Shown one piece after another: positions 1 to 11,388 of a stretch of DNA of 64,000 bases. The stretch comes from Ascoidea asiatica JCM 7603 (taxonomy: Eukaryota > Fungi > Ascomycota). A program made the translations under genes and the position numbers. Where the stretch lies: positions 405,031 to 469,030 of the forward strand of contig BCKQ01000008.1 in assembly GCA_001600695.1 (NCBI GenBank). The letters run 5' to 3'. Below the pieces are notes generated by a model. It had not been told where the DNA came from, did not search any database, and saw only the letters and a program-made list of their open reading frames with translations. Within the stretch, counting starts at the first letter, position 1; each line of letters starts with the position of its first letter.

Positions 1-329
1 GAATGATTTAGTTATATATTCAAATCCAATAAAACTTTCATCAATTTGGGATTAAATTCATTCTTTATATCTTCAATTGAAACATTTCTTTATCTCTTTT
101 CTTATATATTTCAATAAACATTCAATAAATAATTACACAATTAATAAATAATTTAAAGCTTCTTTTTTTTTGTATGGAATTTAAAAGAAATTTCTAAGGC
201 CGTCATTGAAAAGCATAAGAAATTTAAAGGAAATTTAACAAAAAATTATCAATTTGAATGTAATTAAATAATCAAAGAAGATAAAATTAAGAAAAAAAGT
301 GAATGAAATAGATAATAATATTATTAAAG

Positions 330-1493
330 ATGATATTAAATCAAATAATTTCAATTGGAATTATTCCAAAACGAATTTCAATTACTTCAATTACTTCAAT
401 AACTTCAATAACTTCAATTAAATCAATAATTGGATTAAAATTAATAAATTTTAATAAAAATAAAAGAAATTTTAGTCAAAATTCATTAAAATTATTAAAT
501 TTTAATAAAAATAAAAGAGATTTTATTCAAAATTCATTAAAAGATAATTCAATTATTAAAAATTATGAAAAATTATTTAATAAAACATTCAAAGAGTTTA
601 ATAATAATAAAATTTTATTAATTAAAAAATTTAAAGAAATTAAAAGAACTTTTGCCACTCATGGACAATTCAATAATAATAATGGATATAATGGATATAA
701 TGGATATAATGAATATAATGGATATAATGGAGGAGATAATGAAAGAAAAGAACTTTTAAATAATTTAATTAAAAGTGGGATTTTTACATTATTATTTTGT
801 ATTGGTACAACATATTTTATACCAATTTTAATTAATAATTCATCATTTAAATATAATAAAAATAAATCAGAAATTATAATTTATGGTATAATTGGATTAA
901 ATATTTTAATTTTTTTAATTTGGCAAAAAAAAGTTAATTTTAAATTAAATAAAATTTTAAATAAATTTTTTTTATTAAATAAAAAAAATACAAATTTAAT
1001 TTCAATGATTGCATCAACATTCTCACATCAAGATTTTTTTCATTTAAGTTTTAATATGATTGCATTTTATTCATTTAGTTTAAATTTTATAAATTTTATT
1101 GGAATTTCAAATTTTTTAATAATTTATTTAAATTGTGGATTATTATCATCATTTTTTTCAATTTTAATTTCATTTTTATTTAAATTTAATATTTATAATT
1201 TATCATTAGGTGCATCTGGAGCAATATTTGGTTTAATTGGATGTTTTAGTTATTTAATACCAAATTCACCTGTTAATATATTTTTTTTACCAATTCCTGG
1301 TGGAGCTTGGAATGCATTTCTTTTAATGGGAGGTTGGAATTTAACTGGAATTTTATTAAAATGGGGTACATTTGATTATGCTGGACATCTTGGTGGTTCA
1401 ATTCTTGGAATTTATTATGGTTGGTTATTAAAAAAAAGATTTAAAGAAAGAAGAGAAAAAAAACCTCAATCAATTTTTGATATTTTCAAATGA
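330..1493 (+). CDS. PCP1: Mitochondrial rhomboid protease (Pcp1/PARL family)
   Basis: Basic/hydroxylated N-terminal presequence, several TM helices, and rhomboid motifs FSHQDFFHLSFNM, SLGASGA (catalytic Ser) and AGHLGG (catalytic His). Confidence 0.9.
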   Translation: MILNQIISIGIIPKRISITSITSITSITSIKSIIGLKLINFNKNKRNFSQNSLKLLNFNKNKRDFIQNSLKDNSIIKNYEKLFNKTFKEFNNNKILLIKKFKEIKRTFATHGQFNNNNGYNGYNGYNEYNGYNGGDNERKELLNNLIKSGIFTLLFCIGTTYFIPILINNSSFKYNKNKSEIIIYGIIGLNILIFLIWQKKVNFKLNKILNKFFLLNKKNTNLISMIASTFSHQDFFHLSFNMIAFYSFSLNFINFIGISNFLIIYLNCGLLSSFFSILISFLFKFNIYNLSLGASGAIFGLIGCFSYLIPNSPVNIFFLPIPGGAWNAFLLMGGWNLTGILLKWGTFDYAGHLGGSILGIYYGWLLKKRFKERREKKPQSIFDIFK

Positions 1494-2140
1494 ATAAACA
1501 CTTTCTTATTCTTCTATATACAATCTTCAATCAACTACCACCACTCTCACACTCTCTTCAAATACAGACTCACCTCTCTATAATTCTTCTTCTTCTTCTT
1601 CTTCTTCTTCTTTCTCAGTTGTTTCTGCTGTTTCTGCTGTTTCTGCTGTTTTTTGTTGTTTTTTGTTGTTTTTGTGAAATTTCAACAATTTCTGCTTACG
1701 TACGACGGAAAACGGAAAATGCGGATTTGAAATACATTTCCGCGTCCGCGTAGCAAGGATGCTAACAGTCACGTGCACTCTCGATCCTGGCATCGGACTT
1801 TTCAGATCCTTGCCACGGACCCGCGTTCCGTGCTCCAGAATTGTGGCGACTGAAAACACCAAACAAAAAACAAACAAACAAACAAACAAAGAATAAACAA
1901 TTAAACAAATAAACAATTAAATAAATAATCAAATAATCAAATAATTAAATAATTAAATAGAAACAGTCAATTCAATCAATTAACTTAACAATAATCAGAT
2001 AATCAAAGTAAGATAACTTCAGTTACTCTTTAATTTTAATAAATATTCAACTGTTCCAACGAGATTCTCGATTAATTTTTAAAAAAATACTTTTTTGGTG
2101 TTCTATTTTTTTCCCTTCATTGCCATTCTTCTTCATACTG

Positions 2141-2142
<2 letters not shown>

Positions 2143-2182
<40 letters not shown>
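2143..2182. repeat. (TA)n microsatellite upstream of the velvet gene
   Basis: About 20 uninterrupted TA units; it produces the spurious YIYIYI ORF extension. Confidence 0.95.
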
Positions 2183-2185
<3 letters not shown>

Positions 2186-2236
2186 CATATAATATATTAC
2201 TTAAATTATTTAATTATTATAAATTTTTTTATAAAA

Positions 2237-3184
2237 ATGCCACCAAAATATCAACCAAAAAAATATCTTATGAGAAGTATACCAAAAAAATTTATTAAAA
2301 AAACAAATCCAAATTATAATTTAAAAATTATTCAACAACCTGAACAAGCAAGAGCTTCAATAAATACAATTAGATCTGTTGATCCATGTCCAATAATTCA
2401 AGTTACTTTATTTGATAATAATAATAATTCAAATAATGATATTATTGATCATTCTTATAATTCTTTAATTTGTACTGTATCTTATGAATATATTGGAATT
2501 CCTGATTATCTTTCAATTATGAAACCATTAAAATCTCTTTCAAATTCAAAATTAAAATCAGAATTAAAATCAGAATTAGAATTAAATACAATAAATGATA
2601 ATATTAATAATATTAATAATATTAATAATATTGAAAAAAATGATAAAAATGATAAAATTATTAATGAAGAAAATTATGATAATATAAAATATCAAAATGA
2701 TTTAAAAAAAATTAATAATCAAGAAATTAACTTAGAAAATAATATCAATAATATCAATAATGACAACAACAACAACAACAACAATAATAATAATAATAAT
2801 AATAATATTGATAATACTATTCAAAATACTATCCAAAATAGTATTCAAAAAAGTATTCAAAATAATATCGATAATTTTATTCAAGGTACAACTAATAATA
2901 ATAATATTAAGACAAATATAATTAATGAAGAATCTAATAATAAAAATAAAATAATGAATAAAGATTTATATAATGAAATTAAATTACAAAGATATAAAAA
3001 ACGTAGAATGAATATGATTGAAAATGAAAAAGATAGTATTTTATTTGGTACAACTTCTGTTTCTGCAAATATTATTATGCCAAAACCTTCAAATGATTAT
3101 ATTTTTTCTCATTCTTTATCTTCAAATAATATTAAAACTGATAATATTAATAATAATGATATTAAAACTGATATTAAAGAAGAA

Positions 3185-3216
<32 letters not shown>

Positions 3217-3569
3217 TAATGATATTAAAGCATTTTTTGTTTTTAATAATTTAGCAATAAGATATGAAGGTAAATATAGATTAATTTTTAAATTATTTGA
3301 AATTCCATTATCAAATTTTTCTCAATCAAATAATATTAATTCAAATTTAAATTTAAATGTAATTTTTAGAAATGAAATTAAAAGTAATGAAATTATTGTT
3401 TATAGTTCTAAAAATTTTCCAGGTTTAAGACCAAGTCCAAAATTACCTTTAAATTTAAAAAAATTATCTGGTTCAAAAATAAAATTAAGATATAAATCTC
3501 ATGAAAGAAAAAATCCATTAATTTCAAAATCTTTAAAAATTGAAAATCAAATTAAATCTTCTACCAATG

Positions 3570-3600
<31 letters not shown>

Positions 3601-4462
3601 TAATACTGATAATAAAAATATTGTCAACAACAATAATAATAATAATAACAATAATAACTTGGTTACTAATGATAATAGAGCTTTAGAAGATTCTTCAAAT
3701 AATAATTTAAAAGTTTTATCTGAAGCTTCTGCAATACTGGAACCAATTAGTAAACATCAATCTCAATCTTCTTCAAATCAATCTCAATTAAAACAAAAAT
3801 CTCCTTTTGATAATAATTCTCAATCTGATCAACAACAACAAAATCAACAAAATCAACAAAATCAACAAATTAATTCTCAAACATTATCTTATTTAAATCA
3901 AATTAATCAAAGTTTAAATTATTCTTTCAATGGTCAAATACATCCTCAACTTCAATCTAAATCAAATTCATATTCTAATTCATTTCAATCTGATTCAAAA
4001 AATTCAACTATAGATCAATCAAATAATATTTTTGATTCAAAATTTCGAAATGATCTTCAATCTGAAATTCATAATCAAATTCCAATTAATGAAAATGATT
4101 TTATGAATAGTATTAATAGTAGTATTGAAAATAGTATTAATAAATCTGTAAATGAAAATATAAATGCTAATGAAAAAGAAAGAGAGAAAGAAAACCAAGT
4201 TGAAAATGAAAATGAAAATGAAAATGAAAATGAAAATGAAAATGAAAATGAAAATGAAAAAAGTAAACAAATTGATAAAAGTAAAAATAAAGAAGAATTT
4301 GAAAAATTAAATGATGATAAAAATAAAATTAAAAATATACATAAACATAATAATGATATTGAAAATGATATTGAAAATGATAATGAGAATAATACTGATA
4401 ATGATAATGAGAATAATAATGATTTACCAATATCAAGCAGACTGAAAAGACAAAAAATTTAA
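2237..4462 (+). CDS. Velvet-domain protein (VosA/VelB/VeA family) with Asn-rich insertions and low-complexity C-terminus
   Basis: First ATG at 2237 (MPPKY). Velvet blocks present: YNLKIIQQPEQARA, RSVDPCPIIQV, LFGTTSVS, FFVFNNLAIRYEGKYRLIFKLFEI, SNEIIVYSSKNFPGLRPSPKL...SGSKIKLR. C-terminal basic NLS-like RLKRQK. Confidence 0.85.
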
Positions 4463-6294
4463 ATATTTTTCTGCTAATTGATTTATAGATCTGTTTACCA
4501 TGTTTAGGTTTTCTTTATTTTTTCACTTACGCTTTGTTTGTTATTTTATGAAAAAGAATAATTGAGAAGGTTAAATATGCTAAATTAATATTTTATATTC
4601 AAATTTTATTATAAATATTATTGTATGAGTTTGTAATCAAATTCTTTCAAATTTTTTCACATTTTGGTAATTTTTTTTTTTTTATTCAATATTTTTAGCT
4701 AAAATTTTCAAGTTTTTTTTTGATCTTTTATTTTTATTTTTATTTTTGTTATAACCTGTTTTTTTTTTAAATATTCTTTGATTTTCTTTAATTGTTTCTT
4801 GTTGATTTTTTCACTTTCAATGTTTTCGACTGTATAAATAAAATTTTCAATTTCCAATTTTCTTTTATTCAATTATCTGAATTATTACTGTACACTAATA
4901 AGTTTTTGTTCGCTTTAATTTTAATTTAATTTAATTCTTTGAAAAACCATAAAATATAAAATATGCTAATAGGTTAAAATAAGAGGCTAATTTATTTTCA
5001 TATTATTCATTGTATGTAACTGTAATTTTTTAAAAAAGACAAAAAAACAAAAAACAAAAAACAAAAAAAAAGGAAAAATCTAAATCTTGTGTTTATGAAT
5101 ATTCTAAAAACAAGTTAAGTTATTCAAATAAGAAAATATAAGATTTAAATTGAAGAAAATATTAATTTTTATTCATGCATTTAACCTGAAACAATATTAT
5201 TTCAAAAAGGTAAAATTAAAATTATTATGCGTAAAATTTTTGGAGTTTTACTGAACATCAATGTTTAATGAATTAATTTTCATTAAGAAAATAAAAGTTT
5301 ACGGTCTTAATCGGCGATTATGGAAGTAAAAAAAATATTCTTATATTGAAATTATTTTTGTTAATTTTGTTATTCAAAAAATGGAAAAAATAGTGTAATT
5401 GAAATACTTATTAGAATATTATTGCAAAATGAATTTAAACTTGTAATGAAAATGGAGAAACAGGAAAACATTATAAAATATTCTCTTTTATTAAGTCCTG
5501 ATTCTGAAATTACTTTAAAATAATCCTGAAGAACAATTTCAGAAATACAGATTACAAAATGTTTTTGGTTGAAATAAAAAATTGAAAAATTTTGTAAGTA
5601 CAAGAAACGTAACAGATAAATTGGTTAATTTGATTACCAATTCTCAAAAAAAAGAGAATAAACAAAAAAAATAATAGAATTCGACGATAATTCAAATACA
5701 TTAATTATAACTTACAACTCCTGACTTTTCACAATATTTATACTTGAGAAATCAAATGAAGCAAATAAAAGTATTTTCATATAAACAAGTTTTCAATTCC
5801 AACAAATTTTTCCATTTCATGTTCAACAGTTATTCAATTCAATTCGCCTGTCAAATTGAAAAAGTGAAAATATTTTGATTGGCAGAATTATGATTCAAAC
5901 TCATTCACTGTCGCTAAAAAAAAGTCAGTTTGCATCCATAAAAATAAATTTTTCAAAGGGCTACAACTCAAGTCTCTGGCAGTTACTTGTTGCAATAATT
6001 ATTTCATCTTTCGGAAATAGACAGCCAGTTTCCCTGCTTCTTCTTCGAGTCTTCATTTGATTCTTTATTTGAGTCTTCTTTGGGTATGCCAACAATTTTT
6101 GGTTTGTGTTCATCGTTAGTTTTCCAATTCAAACACTTGGTTAATTTTTTTTAAGCTTTATCTTTTTTATTGCAAATTTAGCAAAGCTTAATTCAGTGCC
6201 CAACGTTCGTTAATTGAATTCTTCCAGTTAGCTTTTTGAAATCAAACTCAATCTAAATTGAATCTTATTCATTGAAACGGTCATTCGAATTAAT

Positions 6295-6593
6295 TGAGTC
6301 AAAAACAATTTCAATTTCAAATTAATTAAATTAAAACTAAACCAAATCTAAATTAAATCTAAATTAAATCTAAATTCAGTTGAAATTAAATTCAAATTAA
6401 ACCTAAAATGTCATTTGTCACAGGGATTGGTCTAAACTAAGTTTAATTTGCAGCGCAATTACCCTGACCAGTGACTAAGGCTTGATTTGTGGCTTGACTT
6501 TCTTGACTCGCTTGACTCGCTTGACTCGCAAACCTACCCCAAGCTGGCAGTCAGAGTGACTCAAAAACCGTCCAAATTGGGTATCGCGACTCA
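6295..6593. promoter_or_regulatory. Cluster of TGACTC(A) sites (Gcn4/Bas1-type) upstream of the MFS permease
   Basis: TGAGTCA 6295-6301; TGACTC at 6504, 6513 and 6522 (9-nt tandem CTTGACTCG); TGACTCA 6557-6563; near-matches at 6472 and 6587. Confidence 0.6.
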
Positions 6594-6971
6594 TCCTCTG
6601 CATTCACTCACTTTTTCTCATTTTCCCTTTTAATCTGCCTCATTTTTTTTAATTTTTTAGATTTTTTTCTGTTTTTTTTCTCTTTTTTTTGAGTATTCAA
6701 CTTACAAGCTAATGAATAAACCAAATTTCAATAATATTTCAATATTCACATAACATTCAACTCAAAATAATATAAATAAAGAGAAGTTTCCTGTATTTAT
6801 TTTAGCTTGAATATATTTTTACTTTTCTTTTTCTAGATTATTGCTATTAACAACCAAATATTTAAAGAATCAGTTAAGGTAAAAGAAAGAAACCTAAACT
6901 GTATTTTTTATTTATATTAAAAAAAAAAAAGGAAAGAATTGCATAATATATAAATAAAATTTAAGGTAATA

Positions 6972-8489
6972 ATGGATCAAACTGAGATTAAAAAAACAGT
7001 ATCAGATTCTAATTCTGATATTAAATTGAATGATAATCCTCAAACTAATATTTTGGATAATGAACAATTTGATGAAGAATCAAATGTTGGTTTAAAGACA
7101 AAAGAAGAATTGTCTATTTTAAATAGAATTTATTTAAAATTAGATTTAAGAATTATTCCTGCTTTATGGTGTCTTTATTTTTTAACATCTTTTGGTTCTT
7201 CTGCTTATGGTAATTCTTTAACAATGAATGCCGAAGCTGGTCATTCTATAAAATTATCTTTAAATTTAACAGCTCATGATACTTCTACTGCTTCTGCTTT
7301 ATATTATGTTGGTTATATTTTATTTGATGTTCCAATGAATTTAGTAATGACTAAATCTCCACCTCAAGCTTGGTTAGCACGTATTGTAATTTCTTTAGGT
7401 CTTATTTATACATGTTTTGCAGCTTTAAAATCAAGTGGTGGTTTAATTGCAGTTAGATTTGTTACTGGACTTTGTGGTGCTGGTACTTGGCCTGGTTTAA
7501 CTTATTATATTTCTTTATGGTATCCAGTTGAAAGAACTGCAAAAAGAATTGGTTTTTATTTCACTGCAGCTCAATTATCTGCTGCTGCTGCAGGTTTAGT
7601 TGCTGCTGGATTTCAAAAAATGGATATGGTTAGAGGTTTATATGGTTGGAAATGGATGTTTTTAATTTATGGTGTAATTACAATAACTGTTGGATTTTCA
7701 TTAATTTGGTGGTTACCTGATAGACCTGTTGCTCTTAAATCTGATGAATTAGTTAAAAATAAATTCAGTATTAGAAAATATTTACCTGCAAATCGTAAAC
7801 CTTTAACTCCAAAAGAAAGAGAAATTCATTTAAAAGATATGGAAGAAAGATATAGTAAACCATTAAATTGGGGATTTAAAGAAATTGTGATGATTATTTC
7901 AGATATTAGAATTTGGCCATTAATTTTAATGTATTTTGGTGTTGTTGGTACTGGTTTCGGTTTAGCTGTTTTTGGTACAACTATTATTAAAACAAATAAT
8001 CCAACTTTAACTTCAATTAATGTTTCTTTATTATATGCTCCAATTTGGTTATTTGATTTAAGTGCAATTTTATTAATTACTCCATTATCTGATAAATTTA
8101 AAAGATTTAGACCATTAATTTTTTCATGTTCAACTTGTATTATTATTTGTGGTTTATTTGTAATGACTTATGCTCATGGTAAATGGTCAAGATATGGTGG
8201 TTTATTAATTTGTGGTTTTGGTTTAGGTCCAACTGTTCCAACTTGTATGGCAATGACTGCTGATATCTTTGGAAAAAAATATGGGGATGTTGGAACTGCA
8301 GTTGGTTCTGCTCTTGTATCAGGTTTAGGTAATTTAGGTTCTGTTGTTGGTACTTATGCTTTATATTCAGGATGGCCTGCTGATGCTGCTAGATTATATG
8401 AATATAGTAATATGATGTTAGTTTTAATCTGTGGTGTTAGTATTGTCAGTGCTGGTGTTTCTGCTGCCATGTCCAAGTGGTTAAAATAA
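6972..8489 (+). CDS. MFS transporter, anion:cation symporter (Dal5/Tna1/Vht1/Thi73) family
   Basis: 12-TM pattern; KLDLRIIP, RFVTGLCGAG, ISLWYP..RTAKRIGFY, GLYGWKWMFLIYG and WLPDRP are typical of the allantoate/nicotinate permease family. Confidence 0.85.
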   Translation: MDQTEIKKTVSDSNSDIKLNDNPQTNILDNEQFDEESNVGLKTKEELSILNRIYLKLDLRIIPALWCLYFLTSFGSSAYGNSLTMNAEAGHSIKLSLNLTAHDTSTASALYYVGYILFDVPMNLVMTKSPPQAWLARIVISLGLIYTCFAALKSSGGLIAVRFVTGLCGAGTWPGLTYYISLWYPVERTAKRIGFYFTAAQLSAAAAGLVAAGFQKMDMVRGLYGWKWMFLIYGVITITVGFSLIWWLPDRPVALKSDELVKNKFSIRKYLPANRKPLTPKEREIHLKDMEERYSKPLNWGFKEIVMIISDIRIWPLILMYFGVVGTGFGLAVFGTTIIKTNNPTLTSINVSLLYAPIWLFDLSAILLITPLSDKFKRFRPLIFSCSTCIIICGLFVMTYAHGKWSRYGGLLICGFGLGPTVPTCMAMTADIFGKKYGDVGTAVGSALVSGLGNLGSVVGTYALYSGWPADAARLYEYSNMMLVLICGVSIVSAGVSAAMSKWLK

Positions 8490-8926
8490 ATGTAAATTTT
8501 AGCTGTTTTTCTAACTTTTTCAACTCATTTTTAAGTCATTTTCCAATTTTTTTTACCTTTTATTTTTGATTTCATAATAAGTTTTTTTTCTTCTATAATC
8601 AAATATCAATATTTAATTTACATTTTTCTTTTCAAACCTTTCACAATCTCAGAATGTTTCAGTAAAAAATAATTTGAAGGTGCAAACAATTAAACTCAGA
8701 TAGATTGCCAGAGACCATTACGAAAACCTTCAATAGAAAACTATCAATTTGAATTCAAAATAATGCAAATAATTAATGAGTTGTAAGTATATTGAAGATC
8801 AGGGTTTATTGATTAGAAAGTAAGTATAATGAGTAATTTAAATAAGAAAAATAAAATAAAATAAAAATATAAATATGTAATATGTATCAGAGAAATATTA
8901 AGAAAAGAAAATTGTATTGCATTCAG

Positions 8927-11388
8927 CTATGGTTTGGTTGGTTCATCATTTTCAATGTCAACAATACCTTCAAAGTCTCCATCAGATTCAGAAGAATCTA
9001 CTGATTTTCCCCTGGATTTGATATCAGCAATGATTCTTTCCCTTTCTAAAGCAATAAAAGGAGTTTTGGTTACTTTAGCATAAACCCATAAAATTGAAAT
9101 TCTAACAACAGCAGTTAAAAGACCAAAAATTGCACTAACAACAGGTGCAACAACAAAAGCACCGAAAGCACTCCAATCATCAACATACATACCATTCCAA
9201 ACAATTAATAATTTACCAGCTTCTTTGACATTTCCATGATAACAAACCAAACCATAAATAAATACAGAAATAAAACCAGAAAGTCCACCAATACAAATTT
9301 CCCAACCAGTTAAAAACCAAAAATAAGTATCAGATAAACCTAAACAAATAATTGGAACAATACATGCAGAAACTAAATCTGCAATTAAATAAATTTGTAA
9401 AACATCATCAGCAACTTTTAAAGCAATAACAGCACATGGAACCATTAAAAGAAAAACTAAAACTCTGGCAAACCAAATATTGATTTTATTTCTGAATAAA
9501 TCTAAAGAAATTTCAGAAACCATAGCACTTTGTAATGAATCAAAAGTACAAGTTGAAATAACAACTACAAATAAAATCATTACACCAGATACCCATTTTG
9601 GCATTTTAGATAATAAAATAAAGAAAGAATTACCTCCATCTGGATCATTAACAACAAAATCACCAGTCCAAACACCAATAATACCAGCCCAACCAAATAA
9701 AAATAAAATTATAAATATTAAAAGAGCTGCTAATGAACAACCAATCCATAAATCTTTATCAGTTTTTGAAGCAAAAGTTCTTAACCAAAAATTTGAAAGG
9801 AAACAATTATTTGTAAAAATTGCAATCATTAAAATATAAAGTAATTTCCAAGATAATTTATTTGCAGATAATAATGGTTTCTTAGAAATTGAAGGATCAA
9901 GATCAACATAAGAACCAAAAGCACAAGTTGCAATAATAATTAAAATACAAACAAATCCAGCTTGAATATTATCAGTTAAAAATGAAACTTTAAAACCACC
10001 AATTGAAGTATAAATTGCAGTTACAACACATTCAACAATTACAACAGGTAACCCATCTAAACCTGATAAAGAATTAAAAGCCCAATAAATTGCAGATAAT
10101 TCTGCAATCATATAAAGAAATAAAGTTAAAATTGTAAAAGAAGCAAGATATAATTGAGTTAATAATCCAAATCTTTGATAAGTCCAAGCAGTTAAAACAA
10201 AACCATCTGGACATTTTTTACGAATAATTGGACCTAAGAATGCAAAAAGAAACATTGGTAAAGAACATGATAAAGCATAAACTAAAACACCATGAATACC
10301 AGCAATATTACCGATTTGTGAAAAAGATGTAATTATACCACATCCAAGAGCTATATAAATAATAAAAATAAATTGGTAAGAAAAAAAAGAAAAACAGTTA
10401 GTAAATTATGGAAATTTTTATAACTTAAGAATACTCAAGAATAATAAAAACCTCCGAGGAATTATTTAAAGAAAGTAATTAAGAATCAAAATGGGTTGGA
10501 AGATAAACTAGAAAGGAATAGATAAAGGAAAAGGATAATTTAACCAATAAAAAGGAAAAAGATGGCTGAAAGAAAAAAAGCTTCAGACTTTTAAAAAAAA
10601 GTATAAAAAAGGTAGAGAAAATTTAAGCCAAGTGACTTCAATTAAGTAAAAGTGAAGGAGATTATCAGTTTAGACTTCATTCTTGTACTGATAATTCTTT
10701 TTTTAATAGATTTCATTCCATTCATTTTCTAATTTAATAAATCCAAAATCCAAACAAATCAACTTAAAATACTTCATATATTTAAATAACAACCCAAAGA
10801 ATTTAAATAAATTCTTAAATATAATTAATTAAAATTAATTAAATGAATCAATTAATATAGCAATATTACTTCCTCACGCAAGTATTAACTTGATCGAGTA
10901 TGAAATACGGTATAATCTCAGCCATTTATGTGGCACCCGTAGAATATTGCAATAAATTTCAAAAGGAAACTAAAAAAAAAACAAAGAAAAAAAAAAATTA
11001 AAAAAATAAAAAAAAAGTAGTAGATTCAAAAAGAGAATCAAGTTAGTAGATATATGAAAAGATCGCAATTGGAGGAATACAAACCATAAGCTTATTTTTT
11101 TTTTTTTCTCTTTTTGAAATTTCTTGACTATGAAAATTCTAGAACAATACTATGCGAAGTTTAGCAAACAGGCTATATCAACAATAGAAGACATTAAATG
11201 GAATAAAATGGATTTAAATACGAACCAGATGCTAAAAAATTAAAAGCTAATGCTAAACCCTTTTGGGACCTATTTGCAGATAAAAAAGTTTTATTATCGA
11301 GACAATAAAAACCAAGAGCAACACCAGTGATTAAACAAACTGAATAAGTGACATATGCAATGGCGTTAGAAGCTTGACTTGACAACAT
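8927..11388 (-). CDS. DUR31: Sodium:solute symporter family transporter (Dur31-type, probable thiamine transporter); two exons, 11388-11226 and 10350-8927, 528 aa
   Basis: Joining GCA TCT G|CT CTT GGA gives a continuous ...FNFLASALGCGIITSFSQIGNIAGIHG...YALSCSLPMFLF..., merging ORFs 11194-11418 and 8927-10255. SSS motifs YTSIGGFKVSFLTDNIQ and FWLRTFASK. Intronic TPP riboswitch as known for DUR31/NCU01977 orthologs. Confidence 0.85.
10351..11225 (-). other. Spliceosomal intron (875 nt) of DUR31
   Basis: 5' site GTTCGT at 11225; branchpoint TACTAAC at 10403-10397; 3' site TAG ending at 10351; removal restores the reading frame. A second TACTAAC (11048-11042) with a poly-T tract and AG at 10970 lies inside. 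Confidence 0.9.
10860..10950 (-). ncRNA. TPP (THI-box) riboswitch aptamer
   Basis: Minus strand reads GCAATATTC-TACGG-GT-GCCA-CATAAA-TGGC-TGAGA-TTATA-CCGTA-TTTCATA-CTC-GAT-CAAG-TTAATA-CTTG-CGT-GAG-GA-AGTAATATTGC. Stems: P1 GCAATATT/AATATTGC, P2 TACGG/CCGTA, P3 GCCA/TGGC, P4 CTC/GAG, P5 CAAG/CTTG. Conserved GGUG, CUGAGA, GAU, UAAU and GCG elements are present. Confidence 0.95.

What the first reader, a model, noticed from the sequence alone, without database searches (positions are those of the whole stretch)
10959..11048. Internal branchpoint and 3' splice site 20 nt before the aptamer creates a poison isoform: likely expression platform
Seen: a second perfect TACTAAC (11048-11042) is followed by a long poly-T tract and AG at 10970, about 20 nt upstream of P1. 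Splicing exon 1 to 10969 reads G|TT TCC TTT TGA (Val-Ser-Phe-stop). Only the distal site (TACTAAC 10403, AG 10351) gives full-length protein, and intron retention also stops early (TAA at 11194). Inference: aptamer folding chooses between competing 3' splice sites (OFF = proximal and NMD-sensitive, ON = distal), rather than occluding a 5' splice site as in NMT1. The 5' site is the weaker GTTCGT, and the aptamer P2 5' strand (TACGGG) could pair weakly with it.
Basis: partly seen in the sequence, partly recalled or inferred. Interest (0 to 1): 0.8.

Follow-up and report, generated by a model that had tools for sequence, protein, structure and literature searches.

The report
Decoy branch site beside thiamine riboswitch
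Inside the thiamine-riboswitch intron of a yeast vitamin B1 transporter gene there is a second, perfect splicing branch site with a U-rich tract and an AG just before the sensor; one sister species also has it, so it is probably a competing "poison" splice acceptor, but no RNA data could be found to show that it is used.

Summary
The gene is on the minus strand. Exon 1 ends at 11226 and the 5' splice site is GTTCGT. A perfect TACTAAC sits at 11048-11042, followed by a 71% T tract. The first AG is at 10971-10970, 19 nt before P1 of a TPP aptamer (10950-10854, Rfam 57.2 bits). Splicing there reads Val-Ser-Phe-stop. A second TACTAAC (10403) and AG (10351) give the full DUR31-type transporter.

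The riboswitch itself is a known kind (Donovan 2018). The upstream branch-site module is not described there. It is conserved as CTACTAACTT plus a pyrimidine tract at the same distance from the aptamer in Ascoidea rubescens, the nearest relative found. Thirteen other fungal riboswitch introns of this gene family lack it.

Weak points:
- No RNA run was listed, so use of the site is untested.
- The AG lies 73 nt from the branch A, beyond the 10-69 nt seen in 30 candidate introns of this genome.
- The AG position is not conserved between the two species.

The likeliest coupling to the aptamer is an NCU01977-like long-range helix (11183-11137 with 10894-10850, p about 0.005). It would enclose the decoy module when TPP is absent.

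Verdict: a plausible new variant of a known riboswitch platform, not yet shown. The scan also noted the aptamer and this long-range helix separately, on this same stretch of DNA.

The parts
11226..11388 (-). Exon 1 of the DUR31-type transporter: 54 codons plus the first base of the next codon
   Evidence: A tblastn search with this peptide finds exon 1 in all 9 other yeast loci.
11220..11225 (-). 5' splice site GTTCGT. It is non-consensus: 67 candidate introns of this genome matched a pattern built on GTATGT.
   Evidence: Its position is fixed by the conserved exon 1 end in 10 species.
11137..11183 (-). Candidate alpha element, the anti-aptamer strand, at intron positions 43-89
   Evidence: duplex with 10894-10850 is -28.9 kcal/mol against -20.7 +/- 3.0 for 200 shuffles (p about 0.005); the helix is part of the unconstrained minimum-free-energy fold.
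11091..11115 (-). A-rich tract (AAAAAGAGAAAAAAAAAAAAATAAG), complementary to the U-tract after the proximal branch site
   Evidence: It pairs with the U-tract in both predicted folds. It is not conserved at this place in A. rubescens.
11042..11048 (-). Proximal branch site TACTAAC (BP1), with the branch A at 11043
   Evidence: It is conserved as CTACTAACTT in A. rubescens (L002, TACTAAC at 3469-3475).
10972..11041 (-). U-rich tract without any AG
   Evidence: The stretch from BP1 to the aptamer is 80% pyrimidine, against 55-61% in the rest of the intron. The A. rubescens tract is 78%.
10970..10971 (-). Proximal AG (AG1), the candidate poison 3' splice site
   Evidence: It is the first AG after BP1, with its G 73 nt after the branch A.
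10959..10969 (-). Sequence read after AG1: (G)TT TCC TTT TGA, giving Val-Ser-Phe-stop
10854..10950 (-). TPP riboswitch aptamer
   Evidence: RF00059, 57.2 bits, E 1.3e-9; the only match found in the genome.
10850..10894 (-). Candidate alpha' element: P5, the P4 3' strand, the P1 3' strand and 11 nt of flank. It pairs either within the aptamer or with alpha.
10397..10403 (-). Distal branch site TACTAAC (BP2)
   Evidence: It is 47 nt before the productive AG.
10351..10352 (-). Productive 3' splice site AG (AG2)
   Evidence: The reading frame and the homology of exon 2 both start here.
8927..10350 (-). Exon 2 of the DUR31-type SSF transporter, including the stop codon
   Evidence: It is 71% identical to A. 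rubescens Dur3p (P0001).

Best explanation
The 875-nt intron of this DUR31-type thiamine transporter gene holds a TPP aptamer and two complete 3' splice modules. The proximal one (TACTAAC 11048-11042, U-tract, AG 10971-10970) lies just upstream of the aptamer and gives a transcript that stops after three codons. The distal one (TACTAAC 10403, AG 10351) gives the transporter.

I propose that the proximal module is a decoy acceptor whose availability the riboswitch sets, as follows.

- At low TPP, the 3' half of the aptamer and its flank (alpha', 10894-10850) pairs with an element 43-89 nt into the intron (alpha, 11183-11137). This is the arrangement shown for N. crassa NCU01977.
- That helix closes a loop of about 240 nt between its two strands. 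The loop holds the proximal branch site, its U-tract, its AG and the 5' half of the aptamer, and the 5' splice site is brought next to the downstream part of the intron. The distal branch site is then used and the gene is ON.
- At high TPP the aptamer folds, P1 and P4/P5 take alpha' back, and alpha is released. The proximal branch site is 177 nt from the 5' splice site and is transcribed about 640 nt earlier than the distal one. It captures the spliceosome and the gene is OFF, through a premature stop and probably NMD.

Shown here: the sequence elements, their conservation in one sister species, the reading-frame outcome, and the predicted helix. Inferred: that the proximal site is used at all, the direction of the switch, and NMD.
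For: - Aptamer above the Rfam gathering score.
- All splice elements and the early stop can be read directly.
- CTACTAACTT plus a pyrimidine tract of 78-80% lies 92 nt and 83 nt before the aptamer in this genome and in A. rubescens. The chance expectation is 0.005 and 0.011 copies, and the flanks do not align stably.
- The module is absent from 13 other riboswitch introns of the family, where the only good branch site follows the aptamer.
- The alpha-alpha' helix is -28.9 kcal/mol, with p about 0.005. It is part of the unconstrained minimum-free-energy fold, which is 4.9 kcal/mol better than the aptamer-enforced fold.
- Comparable long-range helices are significant in two other yeasts, L004 and Pachysolen L009.
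- In A. rubescens the best-pairing 60-nt window is the block that MAFFT aligns to the window's alpha.
- In both species alpha lies upstream of BP1, so the helix encloses the module.
- Precedents: alpha-alpha' looping out alternative splice sites in NCU01977 (PMC3597705), and thiamine-repressed productive splicing of DUR31 in C. parapsilosis and O. polymorpha (PMC5997356).
Against: - No RNA evidence of any kind: none was listed.
- The distance from BP1 to AG1, 73 nt, exceeds all 30 sampled candidate introns of this genome (median 23, maximum 69).
- The AG position is not conserved (11, 30 and 84 nt in A. rubescens).
- In A. rubescens the last AG abuts P1, and in Saccharomycopsis crataegensis an AG lies in the 5' strand of P1. 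TPP binding would hide these AGs rather than expose them.
- The A. rubescens alpha-alpha' duplex is no better than shuffles (p 0.95, -18.5 kcal/mol).
- BP1 and AG1 are predicted unpaired in both states, so the control would be topological only.
- Conservation rests on two species.
- Other yeasts regulate the same gene without such a module.
Confidence: 0.4

Rival explanations
1. The module is functional as a branch-site decoy but not as an alternative acceptor. BBP/Mud2 and U2 bind TACTAAC and the U-tract. Because the AG is too far away (73 nt), the complex stalls, or it completes only the first step and is discarded. The visible outcome at high thiamine would then be intron retention or decay, as seen in other yeasts, and not a 11226-to-10969 mRNA.
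For: - The branch site and pyrimidine tract are conserved but the AG position is not.
- 73 nt is beyond the range of this genome's sampled candidate introns.
- In C. parapsilosis and O. polymorpha thiamine raises unspliced RNA rather than producing an isoform that uses an alternative acceptor (PMC5997356).
Against: - A. rubescens has a well-placed UAG 30 nt after its branch A.
- Long U-tracts are known to favour distant AGs in S. cerevisiae (my recollection of Patterson and Guthrie 1991; the paper was not read here).
- No RNA data either way.
Confidence: 0.2
2. The proximal TACTAAC, U-tract and AG have no regulated role. Thiamine control is exerted by the aptamer and the long-range alpha-alpha' helix alone, switching between productive splicing and retention. 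The extra branch site is a tolerated cryptic site or a relic shared by descent in Ascoidea.
For: - Ten to thirteen other species regulate, or are predicted to regulate, without it (PMC5997356).
- An exact 10-mer shared somewhere between two AT-rich upstream regions is not rare in itself (78 of 300 shuffles).
- Only two species carry the module.
- The site is not masked in either predicted fold.
Against: - The shared 10-mer is specifically the branch consensus, at matching distance from the aptamer (92 and 83 nt).
- It is followed in both species by a tract enriched to about 80% pyrimidine.
- Expected chance counts are 0.005 and 0.011.
- An unregulated perfect branch site 177 nt from the 5' splice site, ahead of the real one at 822 nt, would be expected to cost expression and to be purged.
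Confidence: 0.25
3. The aptamer acts on the module by direct pairing. The P5/L5 segment AAGUUAAUA masks UACUAACUU in the apo state. This is the NMT1-like logic of occlusion by P4/P5, applied to a branch site instead of a 5' splice site.
For: In the window, 10 contiguous base pairs form between UAACUUGAUU and GAUCAAGUUA, at -11.9 kcal/mol with p 0.06.
Against: - In A. rubescens only 6 bp remain and the duplex is worse than shuffles (p 0.89).
- BP1 is unpaired in the ensemble.
- In yeasts whose L5 is GUUAGUA the same pairing would mask their only branch site in the ON state, which is the wrong polarity.
Confidence: 0.07
4. The proximal branch site is the one used for productive splicing to the distal AG, with folded RNA bridging the distance.
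For: A. rubescens has only a near-consensus AACTAAC at the distal site.
Against: - About 690 nt separate the proximal branch A from the distal AG.
- A perfect TACTAAC lies 47 nt before the productive AG in the window.
- All other species place the working branch site after the aptamer.
Confidence: 0.03

Closest known systems
N. crassa NCU01977 TPP riboswitch (Li and Breaker 2013, PMC3597705)
   Same: - Orthologous gene family, with the aptamer in a long coding-region intron.
- An element near the 5' splice site is complementary to the 3' side of the aptamer.
- Alternative splice signals lie in the loop that this helix closes.
- OFF logic through premature stops.
   Different: - In NCU01977 the looped-out competitors are three alternative 5' splice sites. 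Here the looped-out competitor is a branch site, U-tract and AG, which is a mirror image.
- alpha' here extends into P4/P5 as well as the P1 shoulder.
- Nothing here has been tested experimentally.
DUR31 TPP riboswitch of Candida parapsilosis and Ogataea polymorpha (Donovan et al. 2018, PMC5997356)
   Same: - Same gene, the same intron position (after ...ASG, phase 1) and the same aptamer class.
- The protein is shown there to be a thiamine transporter.
- Thiamine lowers the productive spliced form.
   Different: - Those introns are reported with one acceptor, and the branch site follows the aptamer. I confirmed this for the O. polymorpha and C. orthopsilosis loci.
- The C. parapsilosis alternative is a second donor, and the main effect of thiamine is retention.
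- No upstream branch site is described there.
N. crassa NMT1/THI4 TPP riboswitches (Cheah et al. 2007, as summarised in PMC5997356 and PMC3597705)
   Same: Aptamer strands pair with an intron element when TPP is absent, and ligand binding redirects splice-site choice toward a non-productive isoform.
   Different: - NMT1 masks a nearby alternative 5' splice site with P4/P5, and the poison is a set of uORFs in a 5' UTR.
- Here no masking of a splice signal is predicted, and the competing signal is at the 3' end of a sub-intron.
Algal TPP riboswitches predicted to act on the intron branch point (cited as ref. 15 in PMC5997356)
   Same: A branch site is the regulated signal.
   Different: There the aptamer is predicted to pair with the single branch point when TPP is bound and so block splicing. 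Here there are two branch sites in competition.

Membership tests
TPP riboswitch (Rfam RF00059) | Aptamer sequence and structure score above the family gathering threshold | tested here: met
   57.2 bits against 54.3, E 1.3e-9, full model 1-105. One search gives the same match in the genome-wide search.
TPP riboswitch (Rfam RF00059) | Binds TPP and changes gene expression | not testable with these tools
   No RNA run was listed.
DUR31-type riboswitch intron of budding yeasts (Donovan 2018) | Aptamer inside the 5'-proximal coding intron of a DUR31/NCU01977 ortholog | tested here: met
   the SSF transporter is 71% identical to A. rubescens Dur3p; the intron is at the same codon position as in 9 other yeasts, all of which carry the aptamer.
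DUR31-type riboswitch intron of budding yeasts (Donovan 2018) | Thiamine-dependent loss of the productive spliced mRNA | not testable with these tools
   no runs listed.
NCU01977-type long-range alpha-alpha' platform (Li and Breaker 2013) | An element near the 5' splice site is complementary to the 3' shoulder of P1, so that the pairing excludes the aptamer fold | tested here: met
   positions 43-89 of the intron pair with 10894-10850. Against the P1 shoulder alone: -15.4 kcal/mol, p 0.015. Against the extended alpha': -28.9 kcal/mol, p 0.005; the helix is in the minimum-free-energy fold.
NCU01977-type long-range alpha-alpha' platform (Li and Breaker 2013) | The pairing is conserved in relatives | tested here: inconclusive
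   In A. rubescens the best window is the homologous block, but it scores -18.5 kcal/mol and is no better than shuffles. The pairing is significant in L004 and Pachysolen, and not in 6 others.
NCU01977-type long-range alpha-alpha' platform (Li and Breaker 2013) | Alternative 5' splice sites inside the loop give the OFF isoforms | tested here: not met
   By eye, the only other GTNNGT hexamer in the loop is GTTTGT, about 35 nt before BP1. The strong competing signal in the loop is a branch site with a U-tract and an AG.
Functional yeast 3' splice module | Consensus branch site, downstream U-rich tract, and a first AG within the working distance for the species | tested here: inconclusive
   The branch site and tract are met. 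The AG at 73 nt lies just beyond the 10-69 nt seen in 30 candidate introns of this genome.

The most novel reading that the evidence does not exclude
A eukaryotic riboswitch may regulate by choosing between two competing branch-site and 3' splice-site modules. Its ligand-free fold would loop out a perfect decoy branch site that otherwise captures the spliceosome. This would be the mirror image of the NCU01977 mechanism, evolved within the genus Ascoidea. It would be the first fungal riboswitch acting on branch-site competition among the papers I searched.
Probability: 0.35. Interest if true: 0.65.

Novelty: new variant of a known kind. Interest (0 to 1): 0.45.

Why it matters
Only a few expression platforms of eukaryotic riboswitches are understood. 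For the budding-yeast DUR31 switch the published work shows thiamine-dependent splicing but no mechanism. It also reports that splicing fails when the aptamer is deleted, which remains unexplained.

A conserved decoy branch site enclosed by a long-range anti-aptamer helix would give a concrete model that can be tested by mutation. It would show that the same ancestral riboswitch has been rewired to compete either donors (Neurospora, C. parapsilosis) or branch sites and acceptors (Ascoidea).

The arrangement could also serve as a compact design for ligand-controlled splicing in yeast. If the site proves unused, the result is ordinary: a known riboswitch with a cryptic branch site.

Tried and rejected
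Junction counts remain untested.
- Joined protein. The spliced exon 1 plus exon 2 protein was not built or searched. Exon 2 was searched by reference alone. In scripts only the single last base of exon 1 was placed before the intron sequence, to read the frame.
- Closer relatives. The protein search gave only A. rubescens above 60% identity. The metagenome scan with a conserved aptamer word gave five loci, four from filamentous fungi (two of them the same sequence) and one yeast. None resembles Ascoidea.
- Direct masking of BP1 by P5/L5. Rejected as not conserved and of the wrong polarity in other yeasts.
- Pairing of the region between BP1 and the aptamer with the aptamer. No better than shuffles (p 0.50 and 0.96).
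The A. rubescens 5' splice site differs.
- A cassette poison exon with its own donor after the aptamer. No consensus donor lies downstream in the window. GTTAGT occurs only in A. rubescens (by eye).
- Recursive splicing. AG|GT follows BP1 in A. rubescens only.
- Longest shared exact word as a conservation test. Not significant by itself in AT-rich sequence (78 of 300 shuffles).
- Accessibility of the A. rubescens sites with an enforced aptamer fold. Unreliable, because RNAfold does not recover the canonical fold of its long-P3 aptamer.
- A second riboswitch intron (THI4) for comparison. This genome has no convincing THI4.
Full report
**What is in the sequence**

The gene lies on the minus strand.
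- Exon 1 runs from ATG 11388 to G 11226.
- The intron begins with GTTCGT (11225-11220) and is 875 nt long.
- A perfect TACTAAC lies at 11048-11042. It is followed by 71 nt with no AG, and the whole stretch from there to the aptamer is 80% pyrimidine and 71% T.
- The first AG is at 10971-10970, 73 nt after the branch A.
- Nineteen nt further on, at 10950, begins a TPP aptamer (10950-10854). It scores 57.2 bits against the Rfam gathering score of 54.3 and is the only TPP match found in the 20.3-Mb genome.
- A second TACTAAC (10403-10397) and AG (10352-10351) precede exon 2, an open 474-codon frame.
- Joining exon 1 to 10969 reads Val-Ser-Phe-stop. Retaining the intron stops at TAA 11196-11194.

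**What the gene is**

Exon 2 is 71% identical to Dur3p of Ascoidea rubescens and 50-59% identical to DUR31-type SSF transporters of many budding yeasts. The window therefore comes from a close relative of A. rubescens.

Donovan et al. 2018 (PMC5997356) reported four things that bear on this:
- Dur31 is a thiamine transporter.
- Thiamine lowers productive splicing in C. parapsilosis (two donors, one acceptor) and O. polymorpha (one donor, one acceptor).
- Deleting the aptamer abolishes splicing.

The riboswitch as such is known. The question is whether the upstream branch-site module is a real part of its expression platform.

**Comparative test**

I fetched the orthologous locus from nine other yeasts: A. 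rubescens, Saccharomycopsis crataegensis, Pachysolen, C. orthopsilosis, O. polymorpha, Wickerhamomyces mucosus and three unnamed assemblies. All carry the aptamer in the same intron, and the intron sits at the same codon.

A metagenome scan with a conserved aptamer word added five more fungal loci, two of which are the same sequence.

In all of these except A. rubescens, no perfect TACTAAC lies between the 5' splice site and the aptamer. In the yeasts among them, the only good branch site lies after the aptamer, close to the 3' splice site. One yeast, L004, has a GACTAAC 14 nt after its donor.

A. rubescens is the exception. It has TACTAAC at L002 3469-3475, 83 nt before its aptamer, compared with 92 nt in the window. 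The identical 10-mer CTACTAACTT is shared, and a 78% pyrimidine tract follows.

The surrounding intron does not align stably. Two MAFFT runs place the flanks differently.

A first-order Markov model expects 0.005 copies (window) and 0.011 copies (A. rubescens) of TACTAAC in the 150 nt before the aptamer.

The branch site and tract are therefore a conserved, lineage-specific feature tied in position to the aptamer. One caution applies: the longest-shared-word test alone is not significant in such AT-rich sequence, and there are only two species.

**How good is the proximal acceptor?**

The genome has 67 matches to GTATGT-N40-70-TACTAAC, against 15 for the reversed control pattern. It therefore uses the classical yeast signals widely.

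In 30 of these loci the first usable AG lies 10-69 nt after the branch A, with a median of 23. The productive DUR31 acceptor, at 47 nt, falls within this range. The proximal AG, at 73 nt, lies just beyond it.

In A. rubescens the AGs after the proximal branch site lie at 11, 30 and 84 nt, and each leads to a stop after 36, 53 or 35 codons. The poison outcome is therefore conserved and the AG position is not. This leaves room for a decoy that stalls the spliceosome rather than producing a distinct mRNA.

**How the aptamer could control it**

Folding the region from the 5' splice site to just past the aptamer predicts BP1 and AG1 to be unpaired whether or not the aptamer fold is enforced. I found no direct occlusion.

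Pairing of BP1 with the P5/L5 segment gives 10 bp in the window but only 6 bp in A. rubescens, and it would have the wrong polarity in other yeasts.

What does stand out is a long-range helix. Intron positions 43-89 (11183-11137) pair with P5, the 3' strands of P4 and P1, and 11 nt of flank (10894-10850).
- The duplex is -28.9 kcal/mol, against -20.7 +/- 3.0 for shuffles, p about 0.005.
- It appears in the unconstrained minimum-free-energy fold, which is 4.9 kcal/mol more stable than the aptamer-enforced fold.
- Similar helices are significant in L004 and in Pachysolen.
- In A. rubescens the best-pairing window is the block that aligns to the window's alpha, but it is weak.

This matches the alpha-alpha' mechanism shown for the N. 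crassa ortholog NCU01977. There, the ligand-free pairing loops out alternative splice sites and favours the productive pair (PMC3597705).

In both Ascoidea species alpha lies upstream of BP1, so the helix would enclose BP1, the U-tract and the AG.

**Proposed mechanism, with its status**

- Low TPP: alpha-alpha' forms, the decoy module is looped out, the distal branch site is used, and the transporter is made.
- High TPP: the aptamer folds and alpha is freed. The proximal branch site is closer to the donor and is transcribed about 640 nt earlier, so it takes the spliceosome. The product stops after three codons and should be an NMD target.

The elements, their conservation in one relative and the predicted helix are shown here. 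Use of the site, the polarity of the switch and NMD are inferences. I put this at about 0.4.

The rivals are:
- a stalled-decoy version at 0.2;
- no regulated role for the module at 0.25;
- direct masking by P5/L5 at 0.07;
- use of the proximal branch site for productive splicing at 0.03.

**What could not be done**

The exons were handled by reference.

**Comparison and novelty**

The closest known system is NCU01977. It shares the gene family, the long intron and the anti-aptamer pairing near the donor. The difference is that its competing signals in the loop are donors, whereas here they are a branch site and acceptor.

The papers on fungal TPP riboswitches that I searched describe no control by alternative branch sites or acceptors. 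A branch-point mechanism has only been predicted for algae, and in a different form.

I therefore class this as a new variant of a known kind. Interest is moderate (0.45) until RNA data exist.

Noticed in passing
window 11137-11183 with 10850-10894 (minus strand): A long-range anti-aptamer helix of -28.9 kcal/mol (p about 0.005), equivalent to alpha-alpha' of N. crassa NCU01977. Similar significant helices occur in the DUR31 introns of Pachysolen (L009, -31.9 kcal/mol) and of the unnamed yeast L004 (-35.6 kcal/mol).
   Followed up: partly
G000 whole genome: No convincing THI4 thiazole synthase: the best PF01946 match is 24.5 bits inside a 2186-aa frame. Only one TPP aptamer was found in the genome. 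Donovan 2018 reports a THI4 riboswitch in A. rubescens. This yeast may depend on thiamine or thiazole uptake.
   Followed up: no
L007 2382-2498: An unnamed yeast has a DUR31 intron of only 156 nt. The TACTAAC branch site starts inside the last bases of the aptamer match, directly after the 3' strand of P1, and lies a few nt before the 3' splice site. Folding of P1 could act on the branch site directly there.
   Followed up: no
window 11080-11085; L002 about 3451-3456: GTTTGT has the same outline as the real donor GTTCGT. It occurs about 35 nt (window) and about 15 nt (A. rubescens) upstream of the proximal branch site. It may be an alternative donor like those of C. parapsilosis and NCU01977.
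   Followed up: no
window 11091-11115 and 11027-11036; L002 3709-3725 and 3903-3920: The word AAAAAGAGAAAAAA occurs in both Ascoidea introns, before BP1 in the window and after the aptamer in A. rubescens. Each copy has a matching UUCUCUUUUU-type partner. In A. rubescens the pair would zip the aptamer's 3' flank to within about 35 nt of the distal branch site.
   Followed up: no
P0018: A DUR31-type yeast transporter is deposited under Acetobacter pasteurianus. This is probably a yeast contig in a bacterial assembly.
   Followed up: no
L018 (G000:C1:412437-416540): The region just upstream of the actin match carries two TACTAAC motifs 87 nt apart, each with its own candidate donor (GTACGT, GTAAGT) and a nearby AG. 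[quoted passage not shown]
   Followed up: no
L002 7732-7824 (minus strand): A near-threshold snR40 C/D box snoRNA match (49.3 bits against a gathering score of 50) lies near the A. rubescens DUR31 locus.
   Followed up: no
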